From Geosiphon pyriformis uo1 (taxonomy: Eukaryota; Fungi; Glomeromycota): a DNA stretch of 64,000 nt. The DNA lies in assembly GCA_016748015.1 (NCBI GenBank), contig JAAOMT010000769.1:20657-84656 (forward strand), given 5' to 3'. Both the position numbers and the translations under genes were made by a program. The notes beneath the pieces are model-generated. The model was not told where the DNA came from. It ran no database searches and saw only the letters and a list, made by a program, of their open reading frames with translations. This document shows, one piece after another, positions 1,585 through 41,006 of the stretch (its first letter is position 1; every line of letters starts with the position of its first letter).

Positions 1585-1598
1585 CTATGCGAACATAG
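1585..1598 (+). promoter_or_regulatory. Conserved upstream inverted-repeat motif CTATG-CGAA-CATAG of the kinase family
   Basis: An identical 14-mer lies at 40852-40865. Both copies are 155-156 bp upstream of the kinase ATG (1741, 41007). Function is inferred only. Confidence 0.35.
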
Positions 1599-1740
1599 TA
1601 AGAAACAACATAAATAAGAACTCGTTTTTAAACAAATAATTTTCTAAATGTACTATCAAATAAACCTTTAAAGAAACCCTCTTTGAATAATAACTTATTC
1701 ACTTTTTATCCTTCTTTATCCTTTGTTCTTTATCCACATC

Positions 1741-3310: not shown

Positions 3311-4453
3311 ATGTAGAAAGTAATTTCTTAAAGACGGAATTTGTATATTATTTATATTGTTTCTCTATGTTAACAAATCACCTAAATTAAAGTTAATCAT
3401 AAATTTCTATTAATTGGTGAATGATTTACCTCCCTAAACTTTCAGATCATTCAAAATTTCTTATTATTTTTTAAAAACACAAGTACTTAATTAAAAATAA
3501 ATTAAATTTGAATATTACATTTTTTAAGTTGTCAATAAATAAAATTATTGAAATAACATAAATAAATAATGGTAAGTCAATTATATATTTTATTGGAATT
3601 TAAAAATGGTAGATAAAATTTATTTTATCAATTTATGCAAATATGTTATTTTGTAACATTTTTGAAAAATTATATTTTCAAAAAAAGAAAATACTGAAAA
3701 TGCGATACAGATTATATATAAATACGTAAATTTTTAAACCCATTTGGTTTTTTAAAGTAATAAATTTTTTTATATTAAACTTAAAATTTTTTTTATTTTT
3801 TTATTTAATTGATTTCTTAAAAAATAACTATAATTTACCTAAGATAAATCAGTACTCGAAAGTTTAATCTAATAAAGAAAATTTAAAAAAGAAATAGCTT
3901 GTACTAAAAATTTATCAATTGTTGATAAAACTTTCACATCTAAATCATAATATAATTTGTAAAAAATACCAATTTTTAGGAATGATTCAAGAATAATTTT
4001 TATAATAATTTGATAAATCAACAAAAATATGTATTTAAAATATTTCAGATAATATAATTATTATTTTAAAACATAATAAATCTTTATCTAAAATAATTCT
4101 TTATGAAAAGATCAAATTTAATATATAGAGTTCAACATAATTATTTATTTAGTACAATTTTAATCTATTAAGAATCATCTAAATATAATAGATAGTAAAA
4201 AATTATATTTACATATTTATATTTTAACTTTCTAAAATACTTCATACCTTTTAAAGGAGAAACAAAAGGTTTTTGAATATCTAAACTATTTAATTTAATG
4301 ATTTTATAAATTAATAATTAACTAAATAAAAAATCTTAATAATATTAAAGCTATTATGAATAAAAAATTTCAAATAAAAACAAAATTATGAATAAACAAT
4401 AATAATTATAAATAAAAATCCAAAAATATTAATCAATATTAATCAAATTAAGT

Positions 4454-4523
4454 NNNNNNNNNNNNNNNNNNNNNNNNNNNNNNNNNNNNNNNNNNNNNNN
4501 NNNNNNNNNNNNNNNNNNNNNNN
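4454..4523. other. Assembly gap (N run); further gaps at 15946-16190 and 34929-34996
   Basis: Runs of N in the sequence. Confidence 1.
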
Positions 4524-6243
4524 TTTAATCATTTATAATAATTGCAAACATTTTTTTAATAACAAAGATTTTAATTATTATTTTATTTTTGTATTTTATT
4601 TTAAAATAATTTATATATCATATTAATGAAATTATTTTTAAAATGATCCAAGTTTTTAATTTGGGTTTAAAATATAAAATATAAAATCTTAATTGTAATA
4701 AATACAATCATTAAAATAAAAAATTAAATTATTAAAAAATTTTGACCAAACTCTAATGGTTTTTTTATACCAAATTTTTAGCCAAAAATAAATATGAAAT
4801 TTTTTACTTAAAAATTTATAATAAATTTTTCTATTTTTAAATATAGTAACTAAATTAAATGTGCATTTATTTAATACTAACTATTTATTTTAAATGTAAA
4901 TTCTTGATGCAAAAACTTAGTTGAAATGTTTTATTTTTTAAGTTACTAATAAAATATTTTTTGACTTTATAAAACAAAATATTTTAAATTGTGAAAAAAA
5001 TCTTTTTTTTAAAATGTTTATTATTATATTATAATTTTGATTAAATATTTTTATATATAAAATTCAATCATAATAAATTTCAAAAATTAAAAATTTTTAT
5101 AAATTATAAATTCAATAATAGTTTTAATATTTTTGTTTGACCAAAATTTAAAAAATGCTTTATAAAATAACTTGAAAAGTATTTGAATAATTATTATAAT
5201 TTGGCAATATTATCAAGTATTTTAATTGAATTTTAAAAAGAGGTTCTTTTTAATTATAAAGTTTTTTTAAACAACTAGTTTTCGAAAAAATTTACTAAAA
5301 AGCAAATATTATGCAAATAAAATAATACAGTAAGTATTTAAATTTTAATAAATAAATATTTTTAAACAATAATATTTTTTTTATCATGCATACATGAGTG
5401 AAGCCCAACCATTGACTATTTATGAATCAACGCTACACTACACTATCTCAAGGGGTTTCCTTATGCTCATCGCGCACATTATTTTTATGATATTTAATTT
5501 TGAAATTTTATATAATGGTTTTTGTATGAAAAATAAATTTACATATTTAATTATTGTGTATTTTTTTTATATTTAAAATTATTTTATCTAATTATTTGAT
5601 ATAAATCAAGCTGTTTTTATTTTATTTTATTTTATAAAGATATTATTACTTTTTATTTACACAGAGTTTTTGATTAAAATTTTAATAACTATTATTTTAA
5701 TTAACCTGTTTCAATAAAAAACATTTATTTGTTTAAAAATTTTAATTTGTGGGAATGATTGCAATTCTTTTTTTATTAAGAATTATAATTGTTTTGTCTT
5801 ATATTGAAATTAATTTTTTTTTTATAAAAAATATAAAAAAAGGACGAATATATATAAATTAGAGTTCAATTACGCCTCAATAATTTCTTGTGACATCATG
5901 TTTACTGTTGTTCCATATATGAAAGATTTTTGGCTTATCAATATTTACCCATAATATTAACCAGACGAAAACCTCGATAATATTCCAATCACAAATGTTT
6001 TCATTCGGTTTTATAAAGATAAGAACTAGAATCTGAGGCATATGGGGTGGATGATAAATTTTTATACTTTGGGCTTCCTATTGTTCGTTTATAAAATCAT
6101 TTCATTAATCAGAGTGATAATAAAAGTTATAACAAAATTGATGCTTTATTATTTCGCCTCCTAGAGAACAAATCAAATTGACCAATTAAAAATTCATATT
6201 ACCCTAACAAGAAAATGTTGGATAAGGCTACATTCAATAAGGC

Positions 6244-6246
<3 letters not shown>

Positions 6247-6277
<31 letters not shown>

Positions 6278-6290
6278 CATCATCATCATA
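6247..6290. repeat. Compound (AAT)n(CAT)n microsatellite in the presumptive 3' UTR of the UBA gene
   Basis: taataataat...aatcatcatcatcat seen directly. Confidence 0.9.
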
Positions 6291-6332
6291 ATAGTATAAT
6301 CCCAATAATTTACATGGAAATTTATCCTATAA

Positions 6333-13927: not shown

Positions 13928-16900
13928 AGGTAAATGATTATTGGCCTCCTAAAAACATTTTTCTTTGTGTTGTGGCTTATGAAAGATAAATTTGACTCCT
14001 CGAAGATATAAGGTTTATGATAAATGTTAAACGAGAAATCAAATATCATTATAAGTCAACGTGAAAGTTAATGAAATAAAGTTTATCTGTCTTTGCCATA
14101 TTTCTATAACTGATAAGAATATAAGCGTAAACTTGATTTCTAAAACCAAAGAAAATTTATGCTTAAAATAAAGCGTGAAACGTGACTCGGATGATATTAT
14201 TTTTTCTATTATATATTGGATGATGCTACAAAGTTCTCACCAATTAGATCTTGAAGATAAAAATACATGATACTTTAGTTCGAGCCAATAAAAAGGACTG
14301 CATTGGTCGATCAAGAACATTGTTTATTTTAATTACTCTCAATCATAGATGGCATTAAACAAAACCATCAACATATGTCAATATTTAATTAATTTTTATA
14401 AAAATAAGACACTTATTTTTACTTATTAATCGATTAAATAAAATTTATTTTAAAATCTTTATGCATTAACATTTTTCAAAAAATATTGGCACTAACATAT
14501 AAAAAATAAAACTGAATATATTAATTGGTTTATTTTATTACTTTCTCGTTAATTGCATATTGCATGACATATTTTAATATTAAGCTTTTTTAAAATTATT
14601 TTCTAAGGATAAATCTAAAAACATTTATTATAGATTATTTTGCGAATCTTTAAATTGTAATATGAACATTAATTTTAGGAAATTGAGCAAAAACAAACTC
14701 TTGCTAACACACAAAATTCTCAATTAATAATTATTTTTATGTTAATAAAATATTTAGGTTGACTATTTGAATAATTATCTTTTAAAAGAAACTTACCCAA
14801 ATAATTTAAATATAACTAAGAATATTTTACCAGCAGTTTTAAGATACATAATTATTTTAATTTCCAAAAATAATCTATGAATAAATATTGAAAACGCGCT
14901 TATTTTACAATTCATTTTTTTTTAAAACATTCTTTTACTTTATTATAATAATTACACAAACCATCTATTAAAAATGATTTAAATAATTGATATTGAAAAG
15001 AAAATATTTTTTGCAATGTGTTTAACTATAATTGTTTAACGGAAAAAGTATTTAAATGTCAATAATATTTATAAGAAAATGATTTGCACGAATTTTAATT
15101 TAAATGACATAAATTTATCGATGCCAATGTTTGTGAAAAATGAAAATTCTTAATGGTTAAGGATTTTCTTTCAAGGCTAATTTTTTTCTGGACATATTAA
15201 GCTGTAAGCTTCTTAATTATTAGAATACTCCCCTCTGAATATCACTATACTTAATATGGGTACACAACCTGAAACCATCAAGCTACATTTTTCCTAAGTT
15301 TAGAATTTTTAGCTTTTCTATTTTCAAGAGAAAAAAAACTTTTGTTTTTATCGGATTATCTATTTGGAGTTTCAACATATTTGCCGATTAGTTAACCAGT
15401 TTCTTTCATTTTAATTATAGCAATTCACCAAATTTATAAAAATCATAAAAATTAAAATAAAATGACATTTGAAAAATATGTATAGAATTTCTCATTTTAT
15501 AAAATGAAGTTCGCATTAATTAATGTATACATTTTCTTGAAAGTTTTTGTTTTTTAAATAATAAATAGTTGGTATTAAATAAATGCACATTTAATTTACT
15601 TACTATATTTAAAAATCTAAATTGGTTTAAAAATAGAAAAATTTATTATAAATTTTTTTAAGTAAAAAATTTCATATTTATTTTTGGCTAAAAAGTTAGT
15701 ATAAAAAAACCATTAGAGTTTGGTCAAAATTTTTTAATAATTTAATTTTTTATTTTAATGATTGTATTTATTACAATTAAGATTTTATATTTTATATTTT
15801 AAACCCAAATTAAAAACTTGGATCATTTTAAAAATAATTTCATTAATATGATATATAAATTATTTTAAAATAAAATACAAAAATAAAATAATAATTAAAA
15901 TCTTTGTTATTAAAAAAATGTTTGCAATTATTATAAATGATTAAANNNNNNNNNNNNNNNNNNNNNNNNNNNNNNNNNNNNNNNNNNNNNNNNNNNNNNN
16001 NNNNNNNNNNNNNNNNNNNNNNNNNNNNNNNNNNNNNNNNNNNNNNNNNNNNNNNNNNNNNNNNNNNNNNNNNNNNNNNNNNNNNNNNNNNNNNNNNNNN
16101 NNNNNNNNNNNNNNNNNNNNNNNNNNNNNNNNNNNNNNNNNNNNNNNNNNNNNNNNNNNNNNNNNNNNNNNNNNNNNNNNNNNNNNNNNNAGTTTAGATA
16201 TTCAAAAACCTTTTGTTTCTCCTTTAAAAGGTATGAAGTATTTTAGAAAGTTAAAATATAAATATGTAAATATAATTTTTTACTATTTATTATATTTAGA
16301 TGATTCTTAATAAATTAAAATTGTACTAAATAAATAATTATGTTGAACTCTATATATTAAATTTGATCTTTTCATAAAGAATTATTTTAGATAAAGATTT
16401 ATTATGTTTTAAAATAATAATTATATTATCTGAAATATTTTAAATACATATTTTTGTTGATTTATCAAATTATTATAAAGATTATTCTTGAATTATTCCT
16501 AAAAATTGGTATTTTTTACAAATTATATTATGATTTAGATGTGAAAGTTTTATTAATAATTGATAAATTTTTAGTACAAGCTATTTCTTTTTTTAAATTT
16601 TCTTTATTAGATTAAACTTTTGAGTACTGATTTATCTTAGGTAAATTATAGTTATTTTTTTACCTTTATATTAAGAAATCAATTAAATAAAAAATAATAA
16701 AATTTTTAAGTTTAATATAAAAAAATTTATTACTTTAAAAAACCAAATGGGCATTTTCAATATTTTTTTTTTTTGAAAATATAATTTTTCAAAAATGTTA
16801 CAAAATAACATATTTGCATAAATTGATAAAATAAATTTTATTTACCATTTTAAATTCCAATAAAATATATAATTGACTTACCATTATTTATTTATGTTAT

Positions 16901-17142
16901 TTCAACAATTTTATTTATTGACAACTTAAAAAATGTAATATTCAAATTTAATTTATTTTTAATTAAGTACTTGTGTTTTTAAAAAATAATAAGAAATTTT
17001 GAATGATCTGAAAGTTTAGGGAGATAAATTATTCACCAATTAATAGAAATTTATGATTAACTTTAATTTAGGTGATTTGTTAACATAGAGAAACAATATA
17101 AATAATATACAAATTCCATCTTTAAGAAATTACTTTCTATAT

Positions 17143-18770
17143 CTATGAAGAACTGTCTAAATATAATAAATAATAAAAGAAATAAGCATTAAATAAAAGG
17201 ATAAATTTTATTAATGATTAATGATTAATGATAGATGTAATTTCTTACTTTCAGGCAAGTAAACTAATTCTTTTAAGAAATAAAGTAGATTAAAGTAAAT
17301 TATTAATCTATTGTATAATAATTAAATCAATGAATTAATCAATACAAAAAATAGATAAACTAACCTTTTGAAAAATCAACTATTTGTGCAGTTAAAAGAT
17401 AATTTGTATAAAATGCTCCTGAATGAATGTTTATCTTTATTGTTGAAGGTTTTGTTATCTCATTGCGTTTCTTGGTTATTTTAAAGATTTCAATATATTT
17501 TGAAAATTTTCTTAAAAATTTTGTTGTCAAGTTGTTTTTTAGAATTTTTTTTACGTATTTATCTAATTTTAAAAACTTGGAATTTGTGTCACTAAATTCC
17601 TTCAACTTCTTGTAAACTTCTATTGCAGTAGGACAATTCTCAAGATTAATATTCTAACATTTTACAATTATTTTAGCAATACAAGGTGAAATAAGTAAGA
17701 AGGTAATTTCAGATCTTTAACTATTTAAAATAGCTATTATAAGAATGGTGTCATAAAAGCAATTATGAAAAGAAGACTTTCCTGTTGCTAATTCTCATAA
17801 TAACATTTTATAACTATAAATATTACCAGCTGTTGTAAATTTTTCTCCTCTTAAAACTTCTGATAGAATATATGAAATCACTCTATATATTATTTTTTTC
17901 TCTGTTGTTGTTGCTTTATTGTTTATAGGTTGACATAATCTGAAGTTTCCAATATCTACCTATTGTTCATTATGTTGTAAGATATTGTCCGAGTGTAAGT
18001 TATGATAAACCATACTGGAATTATGAATTGAAAAAAGTCCATAAGCTATATAAAATGTGATTATTAATTTATATTTTCAACCTGTAGAATAGAAATTTGT
18101 TGATAAATATTTTCACATGTCTCTATGCTTAGCAAACTCTATCACAATTCTATACTTAAATGTTTCAGGATTTTATATAATCCCCAATATTAAAAAGATA
18201 TAACTTAAATATATACTTAACAAATATACCACTTTGAATATTTAACTATTAACACAATATATAAAAGTAAATAAATAAATAAATAATAGATAAATATGAA
18301 TTAATTTTATATATAAATATAAATAATAATATTTTGTTTATCTTTTTAAACAATTCTTCACTGTTTGTTTTTATAATTTTTATTGCTACTTCTGTGCCTA
18401 TTTTTTCTTTTTTATATTCCATTTCACCATGATGTTTTATATTCTAAAGATCAAGTAATCTATAAATTAAGGTTGCTTTATAAATTATACTAAACCCTTC
18501 TTAAGCAATTTTATTAATATTTGACAAATGCTCCTATGAAATTCATTCATAGTAATTGAATACACGATTATTATTATTTGGATTTTTAATTATCTTATCA
18601 ACTACTTTATTACCACTTGAAAAGTCTGTATAAAGTTTTTCAAAAAATATAAACCAGCATGCCATACATAAATTATAATCTTTATTATTTTTAATACTTC
18701 TTTAAAACTATTTACATTTGTTGTAATCATGAACATATGGATAATATTTATTAATTTTTTTGTATTCCAT
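17143..18770 (-). pseudogene. Hypermutated inverted copy of the kinase at 1741
   Basis: The reverse complement aligns through all four exons. It has many C->T/G->A changes and stop codons. ORF remnant 17360-17605 ends AQIVDFSKG. Confidence 0.93.
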
Positions 18771-19435
18771 AATGTGAATAAAGAACAATGAATAAAAAAG
18801 AATAAAAAGTAAATAAATGATTATTCAAAGAGAGTCTCTTTAAAGATTTATTTAATAATATATTTAGAAAATTATTTGTTTAAAGATGAGTTCTTATTTA
18901 TGTTGTTTCTTCTATGTTCTCATAGAAGAAACAAATCAATTTTTTAAACCTTATTTATTATACTAAATAGGTTTAACTATGAACAAATTTAAATTGCTAT
19001 ATTATACAAAATACTGAAAAATTTTCCAATTGTCTTATAAGACCCCTATCATAATACTTTGTAAACAAATATGGCTTTAATTAAATTAAAAAAAAAAGAA
19101 AAAACAGTTTAACTTTTAATAATAATGCTGTTTTGTCAAATTGTGAAAGTGATAATAAATTAAAAAAAATGATTAAAAATATGATATTTTTAAAACTTAT
19201 AGATTCCAATATATATCCTATTTTATGTTTTAAATCTAGGTAACTAAACTTATCTTTTTGTTTAAATCTTATTAATTTGAATAATAGGGGATAAAAAAAA
19301 CCTCTTTCTCTCCTTCGTCCAAAATTCCCAAAAAAGAGTCAAAAGTTTTTTCAAAAGAAGTTTTTTACCATTCAGTATGATAAATCAAAACTGTTCTTTG
19401 ATTACGAGACCACTGTTGGCTCTGTTATTGCTGTT

Positions 19436-21219
19436 ATGAAAAAGACTATTAAAGTTTCTGGTTCTGAGAGTGGTTTCAAGGTGGTTGCATTGAATAAGAA
19501 GAAGAAGGAAGGTGTATTGGCAGAGAGTATTGATAATAAAAGGGTTGCTGCTAAAGCTCTTGGTGCTCGTTCATGAAGTTCTAAAACAGGTAACACTACT
19601 GAGTCTGAGAGTATTGACATGGAGGAGGAATGCTTAGTTGAAGAAACCAGTGTTGACTATGGTGAGAGTGGTGCTTTCATGGAAGAGGATCCTAATCAAA
19701 TGCCAAAGAGTTTGCATGTAAAAACCAAAAAGGTGTTAGAGAAGCCTCTGGGTGTAATTGATTATGGTACTGTCAATACAGATGATGATGTGTTAGATGA
19801 TTTCTTTCTTCTCTCACCTCCTCTACCTATCAAACTGTCCATGCAAGTGCCTGTTCGAAAATTCTTTGCTTTAAATATTGATCTTGTGACTGTCATTGGG
19901 AAATCTTCTCAGGAAAAATTAAGTTTTATCAGGAAAATTTTTTCAAGTGTGAATGGTTTTGGGAGGGCTTCTACCTCTTCAAAATTTGGTAGAATTATTT
20001 ATGCAACTTTCACTTCAGAAAAGGCAATGATAGCTGCTGAGAAGTTGGCAAATGATTGTGGTATTGTGGTAAACACTAATCTCAAGCGCCCTGGCAATAT
20101 TCATACAAATCGGGATATTGTGTTAAAAAAAATTTCTGTGGGAACATTAATAGAGGCTGTGTGCACAGCTGTGTCTGAATTTGGGATTATTAAGAAGATC
20201 AGAATGCAGTTGGTGGAATTGTGGCAGAAAGCAATTGTCGAGATGAAAAATCAAAATCAGGCTGATCTCTTGGTAAACAAATAGTCTATTCTTATTGAGA
20301 AAGATGCAGTTTGTGTGGCCAGAGCTGATGTGGATAAACAAACATGGAATTCTAGAGACAGATTTAGGGCATTGCTTTACACTCTTCCCGTGGGTACAAA
20401 TGCTTATAATCTGTGAGATTTTTTGGATTTGGTGGGTGAGAAAACATGCATCATTGATCGCAATCCTGTTGACTACACTTGTGACACTGCACTTCTGTGG
20501 GTTTTGGGTCTGAGGATGTCTTATTGCAGGCTATAGCTAATATGCCTATTATAAAAGGTGTACATCTCCACTAGTCGTGTTTGTCTACTGTCTTGTGTTT
20601 CTCTTGCAATTCTCTTGGTCATACATCTTTGGTTTGTAAGTTGAATGGTGAGTCTTTAGGTCCTAAGAGCAAGAGAACCCCTCTCTCGGCTCAGGATCAG
20701 TTTAGATTGACAAAGATTTATGAGAAAAAGTCTGCACCCGTTTCCCATCCTATGGCTTTTGGTGGTAAGATTTGGGCTTTGGTAGTTGGCTCTCCTTCTT
20801 CAAACACATCTTGTGGATATGATTCCCAACTTGGTTCTATTGGTATTGGTAAACCTCTCCCTCCTGTGGTGAATAATTTGGAAAAACAGTTGGTTACTAT
20901 TAAAAACAGTCTTGTCAGCTTCACAGAACAAATTGGTAAGTTGGCTAAGAAGTTGGATTCATTCACGCTGGCAGTTTCCCAGCCTAGCCCTGGATGTCAG
21001 CTGCCAGTAATCTTCCCATCACAGGATCAGGTGGGTGATATAATAATGAGAGAGAGCTCGGGTGAAGCCACTTATGGCAAAACTGCTATGCTTGTGGATC
21101 TGTCTGTGTCCTCCCAAGTAATCAAGCTAGAAACTATGTTGGAGGGTCTTTCAGCCTCTGTTCTAAGCTTGTCTGCTCACTTTGATGGTTTGGTTCTGGC
21201 TGACAGTGTGCTTCCTTAA
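19436..21219 (+). pseudogene. LINE ORF1 (gag-like; RRM-like region, CCHC knuckle, coiled coil)
   Basis: Zinc knuckle CFSCNSLGHTSLVC at ~20596. RRM-like IVLKKISVGTLIEAVCTAVSEFGIIKKI. Internal stops occur at former TGG codons. Confidence 0.85.
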
Positions 21220-21230
21220 CTCTCTTCTCA

Positions 21231-24200
21231 ATGACCAATCTTTATCTGGAAAATTGCCATGTGTAACATTAGAGATATGAACAATCCTGCCAAACAGAAC
21301 GATATTGTTTAATAACACAAAGATATGAACAATTTGATTTTGATTTTTATGGAGATGAAGTTGAGAAATAAGACTTATCTGTGGTTGGCTAACAAGTTTG
21401 ACGGTGTTCACATGTTCTCTTCTGGTTTGAATTCTGGCTATGTTGGTGCTGGCATCACAATTGTGTTGAACAGTTCTTTGGTTAAGCATGTTTGTAAGGT
21501 TTCTAAGGTTCCGGTTTGACTTCTGTGTATCAGACTTCTTTTCAGAAACAAACTCTCAGTTTCTATTTTGGGGCTTTACACTAGTGTCTCGTCAGCTGTT
21601 TGATTTTTTCAGGCTGGCGAGATTAATTTTTTAATTGCAAAGGCTGTTAATGAATCTTCTTTTGTTGTTCTTGGTGGTGATTTCAACAAGAATGGTTCTC
21701 ATAGATGTGCCAGCTTCAGAAAATGTTTTGAGTTGGGCCTGGTCAACTTTCTGTGTAGAAGCTCATTTGTGAAGACACTGACTTGGTGCAACTCTTGTGG
21801 TGTCAATAAAACAATTGATTATGTTTTTATCTCTTTTAATTTGGTTGGTGTGGTGGTGGATTGCAGTATAGCTAGTGTTGAGGACTTTTTCAACACTAAT
21901 CACAGGGCTGTTTCTGTTTTTGTGGGCTTGAATGGCCTGCTTGATGTCTGGTTAAATTTAAAACGCAAGCAAGCAAATAAGGATCATTGGAAGTATGATA
22001 TCAAAAATGTCAATGAGTTTAAGTGGTCTGAATTTGGAGAGGCCACAGCTGTTAACACTTGTATATTCTCAGATGCTTTTGTTGTGGCTAAGTGGTATTT
22101 GGATTTGGATGCAATGTGAAATATTGTTCACAAAGTTTTGGTTCTTTTGGCTGATGGAACTTTCAGAAGAAAATGATTTAAGTGCTTTGATAGTGTTTTT
22201 AATAAAGTGTCTTCCAGATTTCATAAACTGGAGCTACTTGTGTCTAAACTGGTTAAAGCTTCTCATCTAGTTTCTGGTGAAGACTTTGCTTTTTTGTTGG
22301 ATACTTGGGACAGACTTGATTCTGTGGGTGCTTCTTCAGTGAAGTCTTTATTTTTTGCTGGCTCCGGTTTTGATGCTGTCTATTCTGAGCTGGCTAAGAC
22401 TAGAAAGTTTTACTGCTCTGTTAAATTGAGAGAATCTAAACATGCCAAAGCTTCTCATATAAGACAGGCTATTGAGAGGAGGATGGAGAGTTTTGAGGTA
22501 GACAAGGGTCATACTATCTGGAGTGTTTTGGAGAGGCCATTTTGGAAGGTGGTATTGGATTATCTGATTGTGGGTGAGGATTTGGTCTTAGAGCCTGAGT
22601 TGGTTAAATCTAAGATGGATGTGATTATGGAGAGTTGGACTCAGAAGTGTGTAGTGGTGCCTGACATTTCTAGTAATTGGAAATGACAATTCCAGCCTTT
22701 GGATCATGTCTTTAATGGTGCCTTTACCAACATTATGTGCTCAATTAGTTTTGATGAAATGTTTGGGGTTATTTTCAATTTGCCCAAGGGGAAAGCAGCT
22801 GGTCTTTCTGGTATACTTAATGAATTTTAGAAACATTGTGATAAGTCAGTTTTAGATATGCTTTTGGTACTCTTGAACTTTTGCTTAGTTAGTGAGGCAA
22901 TACCTGGTCCTTGAAGGGAGGCTTGGGTTTCAATGATTCTTAAACCTTATAAGTGGGAGAGTGTTCTTACAAATATTTGTCCCATTGCTCTGATTGAAAC
23001 AGCTCGCAAAATACTTTTCAAGATTCTTTCGGACTGGATCTCTTCAGCTTGTAGTGCTTTTAATGTTCTTTGTGAGGACAATTTTTCTGTTTTGAAAGAT
23101 ACAATTACGCAATTACCCATTTTTGCTATCAGTTCTGTAATTGAGGATGCCTTAGAGAAGAACCAGAAATTGTGGCTGGTGTTGCAAAATATGTGGAAGG
23201 CTTATGATTCTGTTGGTTGGAAGCATCTTAGGAGGAGTCTGGTCAGGATCAAGATGTGTGATAGGTTTATTAGATTCTTTGGTAACATCCATAATGGCCA
23301 TATTAACAGAGTGATGATGGATTTTGGATTGACTGATGGTTATCATGTTCATGATGGTTTGGATCAGAGTGAGATTTTCTCACCTCTTCTTTGGCATATA
23401 TTTTATGATTCACTCTTGTGTAAGATCAAATGACAAGAGAGTATGTGTGGTTACAGGTTGATTTCTCATTTTGTTGTCAGAACCAGCCGCGTGGAATCTC
23501 AGAGTGAGCTGTTATCATTTCTGGCTGCTGGTGCTTTTGTTAATAATACAATTTGGGTTGGTAGCAGCTGGACTACTACTCAATATATTCTGGATATTGC
23601 TAGTGACTTTTTCAGGCCTAATAACATTTCAATTAACAATGACAAGACTGTGGCCATTCCCATCAACTGTAGAGTTGCAAACCCAGTTTTGACTGTTTGT
23701 GGCTTACTTATTTCTATCGCTAAAAAGGGTGTACCTCATTGTTATCTGAGTATATTTGTGTTTTTCAAGATCTAGCCTGGCTAAAGCACATTTGGATGTT
23801 CGGTTTTTTGTTAATCTCGTACTTAGAAAGGCGATTTTGGATAAGCAGTTTGCTTATTTGGTGTTTTTGGTTCTCTTTCCTATTATCAGCTACAGAACTC
23901 AGTTCAGTTTTGTTCCTTTTAGTGTATATAATAAATGGGATGCTTTGATTTGCAAGGACTTGAAATTTAAATCTGGGCTGCTGCTAGATTTTCCCAATGA
24001 TCCACTTCATCATCCTTTCTTGTACAATTTAAAAACTTTTGAGCAAATTCAGGCTGAGAGCAAGTCGGCTTCTGTCATTGCTTTTGTGAATTCTGTTGGT
24101 GTTTTGAGTCATCTGTTTGTTCACCGGTCTCATAACTTCCAGGTTCTCAGCTGGCACCCCCATCACCCTCTATTGCTTCTGGTCCATATTAGTGTCAGCT

Positions 24201-25909
24201 CTTCGAATAACTTTCTGGCAGGTGTGGTTTGTGTTTTTTCTGGATGTAATTTATCTCTAGGTGGCTCTCTGGCTAGTGCTTTTCATCTTTGGGGTGGTAC
24301 TCCTATGTTCTTGGTTCTTGGTAAAAAAGTTTTTTTTAAATAAGTCTCTTTCCTCAGATGTTATGGTATTGCCTTTGTAGAACAGCTTCATAGCTGGGAT
24401 AGTGAAATTTTTGATTGGAAGACTTTCAAGCATTGGAAGAGACTGGATCCCTGTGGCCCAGTTTTCTCGTGGTTTGATCTCTCTGTTTATTTTCTTGGTG
24501 GTGCTGCTTCTTCTTCTGTTTGCTCTTCTCATGTGGAATTTTGTGGTTCTTTGGATGTTCATTGGTCTTTTGGTTTTGGTGCTGTCTGCAACAGTCTGTT
24601 GAATGCTGGTGTCACCCATCTTTCTGTGTATATGGATGGGTTTCTGAGTAACTTGGGTACTATTGACATGAAGGCTGGTGCTGCTGTTTTTTTTGAAGAC
24701 ATTAATTTGAGTCTGGGTGTGGGGGTGTCTGGTTTGGTCTCTTCTACCTTGGTGGAGTTGCAGGCCATTGCTTTGGCTCTTGAGTGTGTTCCTTCTTTCT
24801 GTGTGGTCGACTTGTTCTCAAACAGCCAGGGGGCTCTGGATGCATACAAGTTGGAGTCTTTATTGATTGAACCTGATTACAAAAATCATTGTTGGATCAA
24901 GTGTTATCACATTGTCAATGTCATTCGTCACAAAAATTTGGATGTAAATTGGATTAAGATTAAAGATCATTCAGGCATTTCAGGCAATGAGCGTGCTGAT
25001 GCATTAGCTAGAGATGCTGCTTTCTCTGCTTGGTGTCTGCCCCATTTAGTCAATGAGAAGTTTATTAAGACTGGTATTGATGCAGTTTCTGGTAATTTTA
25101 GACACTTTGTTCATGATGTTTTTAGGTTAATCTATTATGCACATTGAGAGGTTGGTTCCAGTTTCCAGGTTGTTCCAGCTAATTTGCATGCTGATATTGA
25201 TTGGCTGAGATCTTTTCTGGTTTGGCACCCGCACTCTCACTTGGCTTCGAGTTTCACTAGTGCATGAACTGCTGACTTTCAAACATACTTTATGAAGACT
25301 CTTTACTATCAGCTCCCTGTTGTTGTGCAGAAGTGCTTATATGATAGGAGTTATCCCAATGTGGTGTGTTTGTTTTGTGGTGACATTGAGGTCTTGGACC
25401 ATATTTTTTCTTGTTCATTTGAGACTGTTGGTTATGCTCAGCTGTTAGATAATCATGCATTGGCTTGAGAGGTGCACTCTGGTTTGGTTTGGTCTTCTTT
25501 GTGTGTCTCACAATTGCTGTCCACTTGTGTTGCTGATGCTGTAGTTGGTACAGTTCTGTGTAAAGGCTTTGTTTTCAGTGGTTGGTTTTGTAAATCAGTT
25601 TTGGTTTTTAAGGATTTCAAGATTGTGACTTTGGTCATTGTAAATTTCATGTGTGCATTCTGTCTCTCTTTTCGGGATGATATTTGGCTGGTCCGTGCTA
25701 AACACTGGGCTTATATGGAAAAAAATGGACTTATTCTATATGATAGTTCTGTTCCAGTTTCAGTTTTTGGTTCTACTTTGTTGTTTTCTCCTAGTGTAAT
25801 CAGATTGTTGGGTATTGCTGAGGCTTTTGGTGTTGGTTTCAGATTTCGCAAGTTCTGTTTGTTTTTTTCAGGTATTGATGATATAGTCTCTATTCATATA
25901 GGTGCTTAG
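21231..25909 (+). pseudogene. LINE ORF2 (AP endonuclease - reverse transcriptase - RNase H - Zn finger)
   Basis: APE: WKIAMCNIRDMN, VLGGDFN, TIDYVF, FNTNH. RT: QNMWKAYDSV, GLDQSEIFSPLLW, AFVNNT (decayed FVDD). RNase H: VYMDG, ELQAIALAL, WIKIKDHSGISGNERADALAR. C-terminal CLFCGDIEVLDHIFSC. Confidence 0.93.
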
Positions 25910-28677
25910 TGTTGTTTTGGTTGGTCTGAGTGGCTGGTTACGTGTGGAAAATACATGATTCACTTCTAGTTTAGATCATTTGAATAATGTATAGTACTAG
26001 GTTATATTTAGATTTCACTCATTAAACGTAATAAAAAAAAAAATAATAGGGTCTTAATTGGATTAAGTTATAAAAAATACACAATTTATATTTGTGTTTA
26101 ATTATTATTAATAAATACATGTATAAATTATTCAAAATTTAACCAATAACTTTACAGTTAAATTTTAAAAATATAATTTTAATAGTTAAAATATCAATAG
26201 TTATAATACAATACATAAATAATAAAATTAATTATACACTTTAATTAAAATCAGTTTAATATTTTTTGAAAAAATTATAACAGCTGTATTATTTTTATTA
26301 CCAATTTTAAATTATTTTCTATTTTTGAATTTTTTTGAAAAATTAGCAGCTATAATTTTAAGACCAATTACATTAATTTACACTTTATTTTTATTAACTA
26401 TTTTTAATCTTTAAGTATTTTTTAAGAATAAATATTATTATTTTTTTGGTTAATTATCTATAAATGATCAGTAAAAATTTAAATATATTGATTTTAAACC
26501 ACATTAAAAATTATAAAAACAATTTAAATTTTATTAAACAACAAAACAAAACAAAACATTTTTTAAGAAAAAAATGTAAATTGCTTTAGTATAAACTTTT
26601 GCTTTTTAAAACTTTTATAAATTTATTTATCAAATTTTAAAATTTGCCATATCTTTATTAAAGTAAAATTTTTATTGTAAATTCATTTTTATATTAAACA
26701 GTTATGGTTATCAAAATTTAAAAGATAACAAAAAAGTTTTTTTATTACTCATTATTAATTATGACAAAAATAAAAAAAATTAAAAATATTTGTTGTTTTA
26801 TTGTATTTTATAGTTTTTTTTTTGATTTAATTTTTTATTTATAAATTTACTGTAATAAATTTCAATAGCATCTTTTAACTTTAACAATAAAGAGTAAAAA
26901 TTAACTACAAAACACCAAATTTCTTTATAAATTTATAAAATATTTATTATAAAATAATTTATTTTTATTAAACATATTTATATATTTATAAATATTAATA
27001 CTTATAAAATTATTACTAATAATTAAAATTTTTTATATTTAACTTTTAATTTCAAATTAATATTATATTTATAATTTATTAAAAAATTTTAAACAAAAAA
27101 AACAATTTTGAGTTTTTTATTCTATTAAAATTAAACAAATAAACTAACTTTTTAATCCAATCTTTAAAAACAAAGTTTTTAGTAATAATTATATAATATT
27201 TATAAGACTTTAAATTAGTAAGTAAAATATTAATTACAAGTTTTTAAGTATTTATATTTTTTTATTTATATTTTTTTTGACAATAGTATTTAAAATATTT
27301 TTATTTTGTCATATTATATTTGAATATTTAAAATTATATAATTATTTTTTGTAATTATTAAAAGTTTTTTATGTAGAATCTTTATTAAATAAGTTTACAA
27401 ATTAACAATTAAGCAGTTAACAAACTTAAACTTAATATAATTATTAGAATACTAAATTATAACAAATCTTTTTTAATTAACATATTTAGTTAAAGTATTA
27501 ATATATTATATAATATATTTAGCTTTTATAAAGTACAATTTACAAAAATATATAGTTTTTTTTACAATATACAATGCATTACCAAAAATATTGTTTAATA
27601 TATTAATAAAAATTTCAGTTTTATTTATAATATATATAAATTATAAATAATATTAATATTGTTTTTTTTGTTTTTATTGAATAATATTAAAAATTGTGGT
27701 TTTACCAAAATATGAATTTTACATATTATTTAATTGACAATTACAATAAATAAAATTAATAAATTAACAAAATTATAATAAAAATAATATTAATAAAAAA
27801 TCTTGAATTTATATATTTTTTATAATTATAATAAATTAATATTAGATCTTTAGTCGAAATGTTTTTTATAAAAAATAAATCTTTCAATATAATAAATTAT
27901 TTAAATTTAATATTCTGAAAAATGATATTTAAGTATCAAATTATAAAGTTTTATTTTTTGAAAAAAGAACTTAATTTTAATTTAGACAATTAATTTTTTG
28001 AAATAAATAAATAAAATTCAACTGTAATAAGTAATTTTTGTGTTAATTAAAAAAACTCGAATAGAAAGATAAAACAATATTTATTCTTAAATAATTAATA
28101 TAAATAAATTTAATATTTAGCTTCTTTAAATTAAAAGCTCAATATATCATATAAAATAAATAATACTTTATTTATTTTATTAAGTTCTTAATACAGTTAA
28201 TGATGATCTAAATATTTAATTAGATATTTATATAAAATTTTTATAATTCTAAAGAAGTTTTTCTGTATTTATTAGATTAAATATTAAATTTTAATAATTC
28301 TAAAAAATATTATTTTATAATAAAGTTTTTTATTTATAATAAAACGTATATATTTAACAAATAAAAAATTAAAATTATTTTTATTAACAAATTAAACTAT
28401 AAAATATTTAACTTTTAATATTTATTTTGTTTTGTTTAAATTATGTTTCAATTTCATTAATTGAAAATATAACAAATCTATTTGTAAATTTGATATATTA
28501 ATTTAATTTTTTTTAGTTAATTTGTATAATTAATTTATAGAAATATTATTTTTAAAAAGTTTTGTTATGAATAAATCTTTTATTTTTATTTATTTACTTA
28601 GCTATAATTAATTATATATATTAGTTACTAATATCATTAATTAGCCATTTTATTTTTAAAACTTGTTATTGCTATAA

Positions 28678-28785
28678 TTATTAACTTGATTAATAACTTA
28701 ATTATTGACTTAGTTATTAATTTAGTCATTAACCTAATCAATAACTTGATTATTAAACAAATCATTAATGTAATTACTAACTTAA
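28678..28785. repeat. Degenerate 12-bp-period tandem repeat, about 9 units
   Basis: ttattaacttga ttaataacttaa ttattgacttag ttattaatttag tcattaacctaa tcaataacttga ... Confidence 0.7.
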
Positions 28786-30847
28786 TCTTTAATTTTTTTT
28801 TGAGAATATATAAACAAGATTTTTTAAAACTGTAAAAAAACATTTATACTTAAATTATAGATCAATACAATAATATCAATTCTTTTATTTATTTTTTACT
28901 ATTTATTTATTTATTTTTTTTAATTTGTATAATTATTAATTTTTATAAATATATTAAATAAATATTTATTTAAAAATACAATTGCTATTATTTAAAGTAA
29001 AATTATCTATTTATTAATAAATTATTAATTACTATTTAATTTATGTTATTATTATCACTTAATTGAATTATTTTCTATTCTTTGTTCTATCAATAATTTG
29101 TGCTAATAATAATTAATATTTAATTATATTAGAACAATAGCTCTTGATTATAGCTATTAACAGAATACTTATTTTTTAATTTAGTTGTGTTTACTAAAAT
29201 TGATTAAAAAAAGCACTAAAATTATAACATTAAAAATTATTTATTAAAAAACATTAAAACAAAGCATAAAATAAATAATAAAAATTACTTATTAAAAAGA
29301 TATATTTATTAGAATAAATTAGTTATTAAACTGAAAAGTTAGATACTATAATAAATTGTATAAAAAAAAAGCTTTCTTTTTAAAAAAATATATTTTAATT
29401 AGAATGAATCTTTATTTAAACTTAAGTTATTTTTTTTATAAATCAATTCAAATAAAATTTAAATTAAAAAACATAAATCTTTTAATTATTACTTAAATTT
29501 ATTTTTTCTTATTAAATTTTAAAATTAATTAACTATTAATTTTAGTAATTATTAATAACTTCTAAGCCTAAATTTAAAATAATTTTTTAACCCATTTTTT
29601 ATTTTTATAGCAAAATAATTACACATATTTTAAAAAGCTTACAGATAAAATTTTTCTGTAAAAAAATCAACTTTTATCACAAAATTAGCCATTTTATTAT
29701 AAATTCAACAGAATATATAATCTTAAGTATAAAAAAATACTTTTAAAAAAATTAGCTTATTAGAAATTCACAAACTTTTATTAATAACAGATTACAATAA
29801 AACAAATATTAATAATATTAATAAAAAGTAAAAAAACTTTTGGTAACAGCATTTAAAAAATATGTTTTTGTTTTTTCTTTAATAATTATTATATTATTTA
29901 CTATTTATGTTCGGAATTTTATAAATAATTTATAAATTGGCTAATAGTAAATCTTGTTTAATTTTTAGAATTATTAGTTAAAGCAATACAAAAAATCCAA
30001 AAACCTTTAATATTAATCTTATTATAATTAATTATAATAGCTTTAATATAATTTAAAACCTAAAAATTAAGATTTTTTAGTCTGTTATCAATATAAAAAC
30101 ATTGGCTATTTGACATAAAATTGTAATAATTTACTAATGTTTTCTTTAATTATAAGAAATAACAATTAAATTAATAATAAAATTAATAATAGTTAAGCTT
30201 TTAATTCAAATACAAATTAGGCTTATATAAACTTTTTTAAAAAAATTTTTTTAAAAATATAAGTTTTTAAATTAATAAACATATCTTTTAAAAATAAAAA
30301 TACAAGCCAAAAAAAAAAGTTTTTTTGTTTAGTTTTAATTTAATTAATAATAACATAGAATTACAAAAAACTAATAGCAAACTATTAAGTTATATCAGAT
30401 TTAAAAAACAGAAAATAAATTTCAATCTGAATTTTAATACTACTACTTTAAAAATATTCAAAAATTTATCAAAATTAAAACTATCAAAAATTATTCAAAA
30501 ATTAAATTTTTATTTAATAGTTAATGATCTAATAAAAACACCTGTTTATATTATTTTTGATCACTTTATAATTTATTCACAATTCTGAAAAAACTTTCAA
30601 AAATTTTTAATATTCAAAAAATATATCCAAAGATTAACAAATGTTTTTAATAAAATAATATTTCTCTTATTTGTAAAACACAAATATTTAGATATTTTAT
30701 AAATTGATATTAAATACAATTAGAAAAAAAGTTAATAAACTATTAAGAATTAATTTAGTTATAACAACTTATTACAAAAAAAATTTGTAACAACTTCGAA
30801 AAAGCATGTGATTTAATATTTTGACACGTGACTTTATTTGTTTCGTC

Positions 30848-30877
30848 GATCACTGCGCCATATATGGCGCAGTGATC
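30848..30877. repeat. Perfect 30-bp GC-rich palindrome GATCACTGCGCCATA|TATGGCGCAGTGATC
   Basis: Exact self reverse complement. It extends to 30844-30881 with one mismatch. Confidence 0.97.
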
Positions 30878-31299
30878 AACGTCTCAATTTGTTTTAAATT
30901 ATGTAATATTAATTATTTTTATTAGTTAAAAATAATTACATATATTATATTATATAGTTTTTGAATTTGATATATATTATTTGTATATTATAGTACAAAA
31001 ACACATCAAAATTTTTGGTGTAACTGCTTTTATTCTTGCACAACAAAAAGTTTTTTTTGTTTAAACAGTACATAAGTTACAAGAAAAACTTATATATTAT
31101 GAATATAAACATAAAAATTTGTGTACTAAATATAAACTATAAATTTTAAAGTGTTAAAGACAACAAGTTACACAAAATTTAATTCTTCAAACTATTTTAG
31201 ATAATATTCACTTAAATATATTAATTATAATTATAATTGTAATTAATAGTATAATAGCAATTTTAAATATAATCATTTATATGTTATGTATTGTATTAA

Positions 31300-33930
31300 G
31301 ATTAATATTTTAGTATAAATACAAGACAAAAAAATAACCAGTTTGCTTTTAGAGAAAAGTATATATATATTTCCAATAAAAAATTATGTATTAAAAGATT
31401 AAAGTTATTTCTATCCTAATTTAGAATATATTTTTAATGTAAAACTGGTTAATCAATTCCAGAATTATGTCAATAAAAACCTATTTCAATTAAATAATTA
31501 AGTGCTTATAAATAAATATAAGATCTTTGGTTATAATTTTAATCATATTTAGTGTCAAATTTTTTTAAATTTATTTAGCTATAAAATTTTGCACCAGTTA
31601 TGTTTTTGAAACATAAAAAAATATCAATATAATTATAAAGACTTATAATAAACAACAAAAATTTGAAGTTATTTAAAAGAAATTAGAATAATATTCAGAT
31701 GACAGCATTAAATATTGCACTTTTGGATGTAAATTTGGTGACCAATATAAACTAAAAAAAAAGATTAATGTTTAAAATTATTAAAATACCAAATTAAAAC
31801 ATTAAGAATATAGTTGGCATATCAATATTAACTGCACTAAAAACTTACATAAAATAACTCATATTATTTTTAACAATACACATAATTATTTATTATATCT
31901 TAACATTAGAAAATATGCTTTGATATATTAAAAAATTTCAGATAATATTCTTTAAAAAATTTAATTTTTAACAGAATATACAAATTTATTAATTACCATT
32001 CATAAAAAATTATTAAAAGTAAAATTTCTAATAGCATCTATTTTTAATTGTAACTTTATGAATGCATTACAAAGATTTAAAGTTTATGACAATAAAAAAC
32101 ACAATATATTTTACTTGTTAACAACTCTTATAAATTGCAAATCAAATAATTTTAAATAGGTTATAAAATTTAAAATTAATAAAAATTGGCTTACTTGTAT
32201 ATTTTGAATGTCTTCTGTACAAGTTGTTCTTTGGTTAAAGTATTATAATATTGTTCTAAATGACAATACAGCAAAGACTAATTATTATTAGATGTCATTT
32301 TCTCTTTTTTTTATTGTAGACAATAACACAAAATTTTATTTCATTGTACAAGCTCTTATATTAAATGAAACTGCTAAATTGTATAAATAGATTTTAAAAT
32401 GCACAAAAAAAGCAATAATAACAGAACCATTAAGGTTTATTACTAATATTAATTCTATAATAGATACAATAATTGCTTAAGTATACAAAACAATTTATTA
32501 AATTCATTGTATTTTTTACATTAAAAAAAACCTATCAAAATAACTTAAATCAAAGCTTCACAATCAATATAAAAGCTTTGTTTATGAATTTTTTTTATGT
32601 TACAATAGTTTATGTAAAAAAATTTTTATAAACAATGATTACAACTTACTAAAATATATGTTAATACTAAAAATTATCTATTAAGAGCTTTTTATTTCAG
32701 TTGACAAATAATAGTCTATGTATTTATATTAAAATATTTATTACAGAAATTCAAACTATTTCTTACATTAAAGATCTTAATAATATTATTAAATACATGC
32801 TTTTAGCAAATAGCAGTTTGTGATTTTGTTAATACATTAGATATAAACTGGAAAATAAGACAAAATAAAGTTATTTTTTTTGAATATTATATACTTTTAT
32901 TTTGTATAAAAATCATATTAGTTGACCACGATTTTTTTTCTGAGATTAACAAATAAATAATTCAATACTTTATATCTTATATCTTATTTATAAAACATTT
33001 AAAAATGGCAAAATATTTATACTTTATTATAAGTTAATTATTATTGAATATTAATACTTATATTAATAATAAAATTTATTTCTTAATATATTTTTTTAAA
33101 TTATTTATCTAACAACATTTTGATATTTAGGATTTTAATTTTAATATAATAAATAATTTTATTAAAAATGTATATAATATAAAACAAATTTTATTGAAAT
33201 TAATAGTTGCTAAAATCAATAAAAAAACATTAAAAAAGTGTAGAAAGTCACAAACCTATGACCAAAAAACAGCAAATATTTATATTTTATTATAATTATT
33301 AATTCTGTTTCTTATTTTTATTCATGTTTATTTAATATATCTTATAGTATTATTTATTGCTATTATTTTTAAGTGATGTTATATTCAAAAATTGTGAAAT
33401 TTTACATTCAAATAATACTTTTGTAATAGTATACTAATAAAAAAAAGACAATAATTTAATTATTAAAGCTTTTTGCTTTGTAAATTAAGAGACTACAAAA
33501 ATTTTTTCTAATAAAATAGTAATTCCAAATTTTTTAACTATACCTAAAACCATTACTAATGTTTTATATCTTATAACACAAAGAAAACAAAAATAGAATA
33601 AAATGTAAAAACTCACATAACAGGCTGTTTAGTATGCTATTAAACATAACAATTATAATAAGATAATAATATGATTAAAGCAATTTATTAACCAACATAA
33701 AAAAGTAGTGCTTATATTTCAAAATCAAGACTAAGTTCTGGAGAACAATTAAGTTGATAATGTCAATAAAAAAAATAAGTTTGAGCAAATTGAAATCTAT
33801 TAGTATTATTACATAAAGAATGCTTAAAAACCAAACATTATAAGTTTGCTATTGAAAAAAAAACAAAATTATGTACAAAATACACTTTTTGTAAATGTAA
33901 TCTTTTAGGATACAATAATACAAAATATTA
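31300..33930 (+). mobile_element. Fossil MULE (Mutator/FAR1-related) transposase; boundaries approximate
   Basis: 32208-32560 reads MSSVQVVLWLKYYNIVLNDNTAKTNYY*MSFSLF/IVDNNTK...QALILNET..Y.*IL...FITNIN.....I..VY.....IHCIFYIKKNL, matching the MULE core D-T-KTN-Y-MPL, A-DE, TD-D and HC-H motifs after G->A/C->T decay. Confidence 0.8.
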
Positions 33931-40795: not shown

Positions 40796-41006
40796 ATGAT
40801 TTGTAGCGAATCACAGTCTGATGAATAAGGTTAATAAATCGATTGTTTAGACTATGCGAACATAGAGAAACAATATTAATAAGAACTCGCATTTTAGACA
40901 AATTATTTTCTAAAGGTATTCTCAAATAAAGCTTTTAAAAAGAAACCTTTTTCGAATAATAACCTATTTACTTTTTATCCTTTATCCTTTGCTCTTTATC
41001 CAAATC

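What the first reader, a model, noticed from the sequence alone, without database searches (positions are those of the whole stretch)
17143..19289. One-sided RIP-like hypermutation of a duplicated kinase next to a LINE
Seen: aligning 17631-17890 with the reverse complement of ~2563-2822 by hand gives about 29 transitions, all C:G->T:A in the right-arm copy, none in the opposite direction, and only ~3 transversions. Only ~2 are at CpG; most are at CpA/TpG, CpC/GpG or CpT, on both strands. The left copy keeps its CpGs. Known: classical RIP (RID-dependent, Pezizomycotina) favours CpA and usually hits both copies, while 5mC deamination favours CpG. Inference: a broad-context, position-dependent cytosine mutator, perhaps spreading from the silenced LINE, acts in this early-diverging fungus. 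I do not know of such a system being established in this lineage.
Basis: partly seen in the sequence, partly recalled or inferred. Interest (0 to 1): 0.85.

Follow-up and report, generated by a model that had tools for sequence, protein, structure and literature searches.

The report
One-sided C-to-T decay of duplicated kinase
In a fungal genome that matches Geosiphon pyriformis, one of two mirror-image copies of a dead kinase gene has lost about 30% of its C and G letters to one-way C-to-T changes while its twin is untouched, which shows that the process eroding this fungus's transposons depends on where DNA sits, not on its being duplicated.

Summary
Over the whole kinase body the right copy (R) carries 147 C:G>T:A changes against 9 reverse. 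Polarised with the 41-kb paralog, that is 107 on the R lineage and 3 on the left (L) lineage.

Both copies share an in-frame TGA, so selection on L does not explain the asymmetry. The signature is the one seen in private mutations of nine LINE copies: CpG about 2x, a 5' T or C about 1.8x, both strands hit equally. R was therefore hit by the genome's transposon-eroding process.

The arms are a roughly 20-kb inverted duplication. A dispersed 2.3-kb repeat inside them decayed in both arms (33-37% each), the kinase only in R, and other duplicated stretches hardly at all. So this is not duplication-triggered RIP.

Spreading from the LINE is not supported. The LINE carries about a third of the kinase's load, and the 400 bp between them are less mutated than the kinase. 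What singled out R is unknown; two R-private lesions lie upstream of the gene.

This scan has flagged the same hypermutation many times elsewhere in this genome. I found no published report of it for Glomeromycotina.

The parts
17096..18964 (-). R copy of the kinase pseudogene (the unit homologous to the paralogs). This is the hypermutated copy; the core of the damage is 17350-18910.
   Evidence: Three-way alignment; 147 against 9 differences; 107 polarised C:G>T:A; GC 21.5%, CpG observed/expected 0.22.
1546..3357 (+). L copy of the same kinase pseudogene, unmutated. ATG near 1742; the kinase C-lobe ORF is 2388-2879.
   Evidence: Pfam PK_Tyr_Ser-Thr E=4.8e-32; only 3 polarised C:G>T:A on its lineage; GC 30.4%, 33 CpG.
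2337..2339 (+). In-frame TGA (CGA in the paralog) within the conserved EHGDM-R-KYL kinase motif. R has the same stop at 18113-18115 on the minus strand, so the gene was most likely dead before the duplication.
   Evidence: Alignment; positions.
2284..2285 (+). Site of an L-private 74-bp frameshifting deletion. The missing stretch is present in R and in the paralog.
19290..26041 (+). R-private full-length LINE (6752 bp) with RT and RNase H, a 3' poly(A), and fragmented ORFs. It lies head-to-head with the R kinase, about 520 bp upstream of the kinase ATG.
   Evidence: Pfam RVT_1 and RNase_H; empty site in L and a target-site duplication; genomic copies at 86-88% and 75-77% identity; private load about 9% of C/G.
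19280..19289 (.). Target-site duplication AATAATAGGG, left copy. The right copy is at 26042-26051. L has the sequence once, at 1089-1098.
19037..19038 (-). Site of an R-private deletion of about 119 bp (L 1353-1471), 270-390 bp upstream of the kinase ATG. Part of the missing stretch is conserved upstream of the paralog.
   Evidence: BLAST blocks; homology of L 1363-1417 to 40715-40767.
1..4841 (+). In-window part of the L arm of the inverted duplication. The arm continues to 16.2 kb before the window start.
15626..35294 (-). R arm of the inverted duplication, interrupted by the LINE.
31128..33432 (-). R-arm copy of a 2.3-kb dispersed repeat (at least 40 genomic copies). It serves as an internal control because it decayed in both arms after the duplication: 145 sites lost in R, 124 in L.
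40815..42627 (+). Kinase paralog used as the outgroup for polarisation (79-85% identical to L).

Best explanation
The right-arm copy of an already dead kinase gene was drawn into the same regional, one-way C-to-T hypermutation that erodes transposons throughout this genome. Its mirror-image twin lies in a domain that the process does not touch.

Shown: the process acts on double-stranded genomic DNA after integration. It hits both strands equally and all contexts, with about 2x preference for CpG and for a 5' pyrimidine. It is targeted in cis, by position or chromatin state, not by duplication or sequence homology.

Inferred: the chemistry is deamination of cytosine or 5-methylcytosine in silenced, probably methylated, chromatin, carried out or promoted by a DNMT-family enzyme. 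On the R side the boundary of the silenced domain lies about 4 kb (L-arm coordinates) closer to the central genes.

Possible but unproven: R lost the activity of the kinase promoter. Two R-private lesions lie upstream of the gene, a 119-bp deletion and the LINE. The LINE is not shown to be the trigger.
For: The changes are one-sided and polarised: 107 against 3 and 147 against 9.

Selection on L is excluded. The TGA stop is shared, L has its own 74-bp frameshift, and intron and upstream sites are equally spared.

The signature matches that of transposons. In kinase R the rates are CpG 51%, 5'T 37%, 5'C 34%, 5'A 21%, 5'G 19%. Pooled over nine LINE copies the private changes are about 80% C:G>T:A, transitions outnumber transversions about 20:1, and the rates are CpG 21%, 5'T 10.6%, 5'C 7.9%, 5'A 5.4%, 5'G 5.7%, with both strands equal. 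There is no strand coordination.

The arms supply an internal control. A repeat with at least 40 copies decayed on both sides (YpC 34% and 28%, RpC 23% and 21%). The kinase decayed only in R (YpC 35%, RpC 17%, against 2% in L). Other duplicated stretches decayed little.

Of the 29 distinct family copies sampled (L, R and 27 other paralogs), only R has low GC: 21.9% against 29.6-36.1%.

DNMT1-type loci (RFD+BAH+DNMT) and a stand-alone catalytic DNMT exist in the genome. In the related fungus R. irregularis, transposons and nearby kinase and Sel1 genes are heavily CG-methylated.
Against: There are no methylation, chromatin or RNA data for this locus, so the silenced domain is inferred from mutation load alone.

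The load in R peaks over the kinase and is lower in the AT-rich stretches on either side (10-15%). A uniform domain does not predict this. Those flanks also have 4-5x fewer transversions, so gene conversion between the arms may have reset them.

Most events are outside CpG, whereas the methylation known in the related AM fungus is CG.

Why R and not L remains unexplained.
Confidence: 0.65

Rival explanations
1. LINE-nucleated spreading. Silencing set up on the inserted LINE spread into the neighbouring kinase, and the mutator followed it.
For: Only R has a LINE close by: about 520 bp from its ATG, against 8.3 kb from the nearest LINE for L. The R flanks on both sides of the LINE carry loads (10-14%) similar to the LINE's own 9%, and exceed L's (47 against 11 sites). 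Genes near transposons are highly methylated in R. irregularis.
Against: The kinase load is about 3.3x the LINE's in matched contexts (YpC 35% against 10.6%, RpC 17% against 5%) and equals that of a repeat exposed since the duplication. The 400 bp between the LINE and the kinase are less mutated than the kinase (6 of 59 against 147 of 483). Beside the L-private LINE one flank shows only a weak L excess (17 against 8) and the other shows none. Paralogs that abut 7-12% GC deserts keep normal GC.
Confidence: 0.2
2. Classical duplication-triggered RIP: pairing of repeats, RID-type enzyme, premeiotic.
For: The changes are almost purely C:G>T:A, on both strands, in a duplicated sequence. A stand-alone catalytic DNMT gene exists.
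Against: One copy is untouched. Duplicated stretches that still differ little between the arms are also barely mutated. There is no CpA preference (CpA 26% against CpG 51%), and a 5' pyrimidine effect is present instead. Single LINE insertions decay individually.
Confidence: 0.03
3. Relaxed selection plus ordinary AT-biased mutation. R is a neutral pseudogene drifting towards the genome's AT-rich equilibrium while L is kept by selection.
For: The genome is very AT-rich, with intergenic DNA at 10-13% GC.
Against: L is itself broken, by the shared TGA and a private 74-bp frameshift. R's load is 30% of C/G sites, against about 1% change at A/T sites. Transversions are few. Intron and upstream sites behave like exons.
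Confidence: 0.03
4. An AID/APOBEC-like deaminase acting on single-stranded DNA exposed by transcription or replication of the R locus.
For: There is a 5' T/C preference of about 1.8x, and the damaged domain roughly coincides with the transcription unit (profile).
Against: There are no strand-coordinated runs (72 runs observed, 73 expected), and the two strands are equal. The context preference is weak. No match was found to the APOBEC_N, NAD1 or OTT_1508 deaminase families in the genome; this is a weak negative.
Confidence: 0.09

Closest known systems
Repeat-induced point mutation (RIP) of Neurospora and other Pezizomycotina
   Same: Irreversible C:G>T:A hypermutation on both strands that destroys repeated DNA, lowers GC and leaves AT-rich relics.
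   Different: Here duplication is not the trigger: one twin and other duplicated stretches are spared. The context is CpG plus a 5' pyrimidine instead of CpA. Single-copy insertions decay individually. The lineage is Glomeromycotina, where RIP signatures were reported as not detected.
TCG hypermutation of repeats in Pucciniomycotina (Microbotryum, Puccinia; Horns et al. 2012, as cited in PMC12730594)
   Same: A RIP-like process outside Pezizomycotina in which TCG is the most mutable trinucleotide (60% here). It is thought to depend on a DNMT1-family enzyme other than RID.
   Different: Here 77% of events lie outside CpG, and every trinucleotide is hit (10-39%).
5-methylcytosine deamination in methylated transposons and adjacent genes (CG methylation of transposons and nearby kinase/Sel1 genes in Rhizophagus irregularis, Dallaire et al. 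2021)
   Same: Transposon-centred and regional; it can include host genes of expanded families near transposons; CpG is the fastest class here.
   Different: The reported methylation is CG, whereas most mutations here are non-CG. No methylome exists for this organism.
APOBEC3 editing of retroelements
   Same: C>T with a 5' T/C bias, directed at retroelements.
   Different: APOBEC3 edits single-stranded cDNA, giving a strong strand bias and strong motif specificity. Here both strands are equal, the events post-date integration, the bias is weak, and non-retrotransposed DNA is hit.

Membership tests
Classical RIP | Almost exclusively C:G>T:A transitions, on both strands | tested here: met
   107 of 129 polarised R-lineage changes; 82 G and 74 C sites mutated.
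Classical RIP | Triggered by duplication; acts on both copies along the duplicated length | tested here: not met
   L has 3 polarised C>T against 107 in R. Duplicated segments A and H carry low loads in both arms.
Classical RIP | CpA dinucleotide preference | tested here: not met
   CpA 26%, CpC 28%, CpT 23%, CpG 51%. The 5' neighbour matters instead: T 37%, C 34%, A 21%, G 19%.
Classical RIP | RID/Masc1-type (DNMT4) methyltransferase in the genome | tested here: inconclusive
   A stand-alone catalytic DNMT exists at C657:788280-789372. It was not placed phylogenetically because no RID, Masc1 or DIM-2 reference sequences were on hand.
Classical RIP | Occurs premeiotically in the sexual cycle | not testable with these tools
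   No data.
Pucciniomycotina-type TCG hypermutation | Mutations concentrated at TCG | tested here: not met
   TCG is the top class (15 of 25 sites, 60%), but only 36 of 156 events are at CpG.
CpG-restricted 5mC decay | Mutations confined to CpG | tested here: not met
   120 of 156 events are outside CpG. The LINE copies behave the same way.
AID/APOBEC editing | Strand-coordinated clusters and a strong 5' motif | tested here: not met
   Runs test: 72 observed against 73.3 expected. The motif bias is only about 1.8x.
AID/APOBEC editing | An AID/APOBEC-like deaminase gene present | tested here: inconclusive
   No hit for PF08210, PF18778 or PF14441 in the six-frame genome search. Other deaminase clades were not searched, and two of the three control searches found nothing anywhere.
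LINE retrotransposon (the insertion at 19290-26041) | RT domain, poly(A) tail, target-site duplication, empty site in the homologous arm | tested here: met
   RVT_1 (E 7e-4, 19.7 bits, below the 29.6 cut-off) and RNase_H; A11 tail and a 10-bp target-site duplication; many full-length copies.
Protein kinase (PK_Tyr_Ser-Thr) | Kinase domain with an intact reading frame | tested here: not met
   The domain is recognised in L (E 4.8e-32), but both copies carry an in-frame TGA and L has a 74-bp frameshift. Both are pseudogenes.

The most novel reading that the evidence does not exclude
The mutator reads chromatin state, not repeat identity. Any DNA that falls into a silenced domain, host genes included, is irreversibly converted towards AT. 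Two initially identical copies can take opposite epigenetic fates, one of which is then fixed as mutation. That would be an epigenetically guided gene- and transposon-killing system in Glomeromycotina, distinct from RIP in both trigger and signature, possibly run by a DNMT-family enzyme acting in all sequence contexts.
Probability: 0.35. Interest if true: 0.8.

Novelty: new variant of a known kind. Interest (0 to 1): 0.62.

Why it matters
RIP-like genome defence is generally held to be confined to Dikarya and has been reported as not detected in arbuscular-mycorrhizal relatives.

This locus is a clean natural experiment. Two copies that presumably began identical sit 14 kb apart, and the same arms contain a dispersed repeat as a positive control and barely diverged duplicated stretches as a negative control. 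Together these separate three possible triggers: duplication is excluded, sequence homology acting in trans is excluded, and position in cis is retained. The locus also shows that host-derived DNA can be a substrate.

It gives a concrete pair of loci, about 10% diverged and so uniquely mappable, on which 5mC, histone marks, small RNAs and transcription can be compared to find what directs the mutator. It also bears on how the 10-13% GC deserts and the 64% repeat content of this genome arose.

Tried and rejected
- Strand-coordination test, for single-strand deaminase events: no signal.
- Majority-rule polarisation of the 2.3-kb repeat using ten other copies: it failed because every copy has eroded independently, so the majority base at ancestral C sites is often T. 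I used the one-way assumption and independent-loss algebra instead.
- RNA evidence for L against R: no RNA run holds the locus. The runs are unitigs dominated by paralog cross-mapping, and they only confirm that the R sequence exists.
- Classifying the stand-alone DNMT with the ESM Atlas: it returned only bacterial fragment clusters and was uninformative.
- Looking for LINE or repeat homology within 1.5 kb of 28 paralog loci (27 distinct paralogs): none found, so these paralogs cannot test LINE proximity.
- Relaxed selection, classical RIP and assembly artefact were considered and rejected, as set out under the rival explanations.

Full report
**Anatomy.** The window is G000:C434:20657-84656 in a genome of 128.3 Mb and 792 contigs. 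Those figures match the published Geosiphon pyriformis assembly: 129 Mb, 795 scaffolds, 64% repeats, 29% GC (PMC9453076). Earlier notes of this scan name the same organism. I did not verify the identity independently.

The finding lies in a large inverted duplication. The L arm runs from 16.2 kb before the window start to 4841, and the R arm runs from 15626 to 35294. The 10.7-kb spacer holds ordinary genes, including ribosomal protein L19e and a UBA-domain protein, at 35-42% GC.

Each arm has a private LINE. R has a 6752-bp element at 19290-26041 with RT and RNase H, an A11 tail and the target-site duplication AATAATAGGG; L has the empty site at 1089-1098. L has a younger LINE, 73% identical and 43-47% GC, at -13565..-6820.

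Each arm also carries one copy of a kinase gene from a family with more than 100 genomic matches. The L copy is 1546-3357 on the plus strand; the R copy is 17096-18964 on the minus strand.

**The observation.**
- Over L 1089-4900 the counts are 175 against 13.
- Over the kinase body (L 1500-3100) they are 147 against 9, which is 30.4% of C/G sites, compared with about 0.8% transitions and 2% transversions at A/T sites.
- With the paralog at 40815-42627 as outgroup, the R lineage has 107 C:G>T:A among 129 changes and the L lineage has 3.
- A further 19 apparent T>C or A>G changes on the L lineage are better read as parallel C>T in R and in the outgroup.
- R has GC 21.5% and 4 CpGs; L has 30.4% and 33.
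- Of the 29 distinct family copies I could cut out (L, R and 27 other paralogs), R is the only one below 29.6% GC.
- Unitigs of a public run reproduce three long stretches of R without a difference.

**Selection does not explain it.** Both copies carry the same in-frame TGA (CGA in the paralog) inside the conserved kinase core. L additionally has a private 74-bp frameshifting deletion. L is therefore a pseudogene too. Its cytosines are spared in the intron, upstream region and exons alike, so the asymmetry is one of mutation.

**Signature.** In R the mutated fraction is 51% at CpG against 23-28% at CpA, CpC and CpT. By the 5' base it is T 37%, C 34%, A 21%, G 19%. TCG is highest at 60% and GCA lowest at 10%. 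G and C sites are hit equally, and there are no strand-coordinated runs (72 observed, 73 expected).

I then took nine full-length LINE copies from two subfamilies and counted changes private to each copy. About 80% are C:G>T:A, and transitions outnumber transversions about 20:1. Both strands are equal. The preferences are the same as in R: CpG 21% against about 7% elsewhere, and 5' T 10.6%, C 7.9%, A 5.4%, G 5.7%. R was therefore hit by the same post-integration, double-strand process that erodes LINEs in this genome.

**Internal controls in the arms.**
- Segment -6820..-4515 (R 31128-33432) is a 2.3-kb dispersed repeat with at least 40 genomic copies. Since the duplication it has lost C/G in both arms: 145 sites in R and 124 in L. 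Assuming independent loss, that is 33-37% per arm.
- From about -150 inwards, L is almost untouched (0-5%). R continues to be mutated as far as about L-equivalent 4000.
- Segments A (-15054..-13565) and H2 (4001-4900) are little changed in either arm.

So duplication alone does not trigger the process. The spared duplicated stretches (L's kinase, its flanks and segment A) presumably began as identical copies, which is an inference. A trans-acting homology signal, whether DNA pairing or small RNAs, would have hit L as well. The targeting is in cis.

**The LINE as trigger.** Two results go against spreading from the LINE.

First, load does not decay with distance from it. It is 14% beyond the LINE's 3' end, 10% in the 400 bp between the LINE and the kinase, 30% over the kinase, then 15%, 8% and 5%.

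Second, in matched contexts the kinase carries YpC 35% and RpC 17%. That equals the repeat's load since the duplication (YpC 34% and 28%; RpC 23% and 21%) and is about 3.3x the LINE's own load (YpC 10.6%, RpC 5%). If rates are equal, R's decay began near the time of the duplication and the LINE arrived later, into DNA that was already decaying.

The R flanks next to the LINE (10-15%) are compatible with a LINE-age halo, so a contributory role is not excluded. Paralogs that abut 7-12% GC deserts keep normal GC.

**Unexplained.**
- Why R and not L. A second R-private lesion is a 119-bp deletion 270-390 bp upstream of the ATG, partly conserved upstream of the paralog. Together with the LINE about 520 bp upstream, it could have silenced the promoter and removed a barrier, but this is inference.
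- Why the kinase is hotter than its AT-rich flanks. The low-load flanks also have 4-5x fewer transversions (0.3-0.4% against 1.5-2%). They may have been reset by gene conversion between the arms; alternatively the hypermutation causes collateral changes.

**Enzymes.** The genome has DNMT1-type loci with RFD, BAH and DNMT domains (C371, and C702 with stops), plus a stand-alone catalytic DNMT at C657:788280-789372 with a degenerate copy 32 kb away. I could not place the stand-alone enzyme relative to RID, Masc1 or DIM-2. There were no matches to the APOBEC_N, NAD1 or OTT_1508 deaminase families; this is a weak negative.

**Literature.**
- Dallaire et al. 2021 state that RIP signatures were not detected in Gigaspora margarita or Mucoromycotina. 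They also report that transposons, and kinase and Sel1 genes near transposons, are highly CG-methylated in R. irregularis.
- A 2025 survey of AMF transposons that includes Geosiphon does not mention RIP or hypermutation.
- TCG hypermutation of repeats is known in Pucciniomycotina.

**Verdict.** It is one instance, unusually well controlled, of a transposon-eroding C>T process that this scan has flagged many times elsewhere in this genome. What this locus adds is that the process is not set off by duplication or homology, that it can consume host-derived DNA, and that it is position-dependent.

Noticed in passing
L042/L041 (window -13565..-6820, i.e. G000:C434:7092-13837): The L arm has its own private, younger LINE: 6.75 kb, 73% identical to the R-arm LINE, GC 43-47%, ORFs up to 623 aa, with a target-site duplication of about 8 bp (TACTATTA). 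One flank shows a weak L-sided C>T excess (17 against 8); the other shows none.
   Followed up: partly
window 19037/19038 (L 1353-1471): R-private deletion of about 119 bp, 270-390 bp upstream of the kinase ATG. Part of the missing stretch is conserved upstream of the paralog at 40715-40767. It is a second cis difference, besides the LINE, that could have silenced R.
   Followed up: partly
window 1500-3100 against 3101-4900, and -15054..-13565: Transversions and A/T-site changes are 4-5x more frequent in the hypermutated segments (1.5-2%) than in the low-load duplicated segments (0.3-0.4%). Either the arms are a mosaic of gene-conversion ages, or the hypermutation causes collateral non-C changes.
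   Followed up: no
window 4454-4523 and 15946-16190: Runs of N (assembly gaps) lie at homologous positions in both arms, which suggests a sequence there that is hard to assemble. A third gap lies at 34929-34996.
   Followed up: no
window 1546-3357 / 40815-42627: At 19 sites R and the outgroup paralog both have T/A where L has C/G. These look like parallel C>T hits and suggest recurrent hot sites or mild exposure of the paralog as well.
   Followed up: no
G000:C657:788280-789372 (L043) and C657:820713-821336 (L044): A stand-alone catalytic-domain C5 DNA methyltransferase with no RFD or BAH upstream. Its closest solved relatives are DNMT1 catalytic domains (E about 1e-15). A degenerate duplicate lies 32 kb away. 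It is a candidate enzyme for the process but has not been classified.
   Followed up: partly
loci L013, L025, L027, L030 (kinase paralogs): Several kinase paralogs directly abut 7-12% GC deserts yet keep 30-35% GC in the gene body, so the boundaries between eroded and spared DNA are sharp.
   Followed up: partly
window 6000-14000: The spacer between the arms holds ordinary genes (ribosomal protein L19e at 8757-9083, a UBA-domain protein at 6333-6971, and a 587-aa ORF without a Pfam match at 10079-11842) at 35-42% GC. It is an unmutated island between the two arms.
   Followed up: partly
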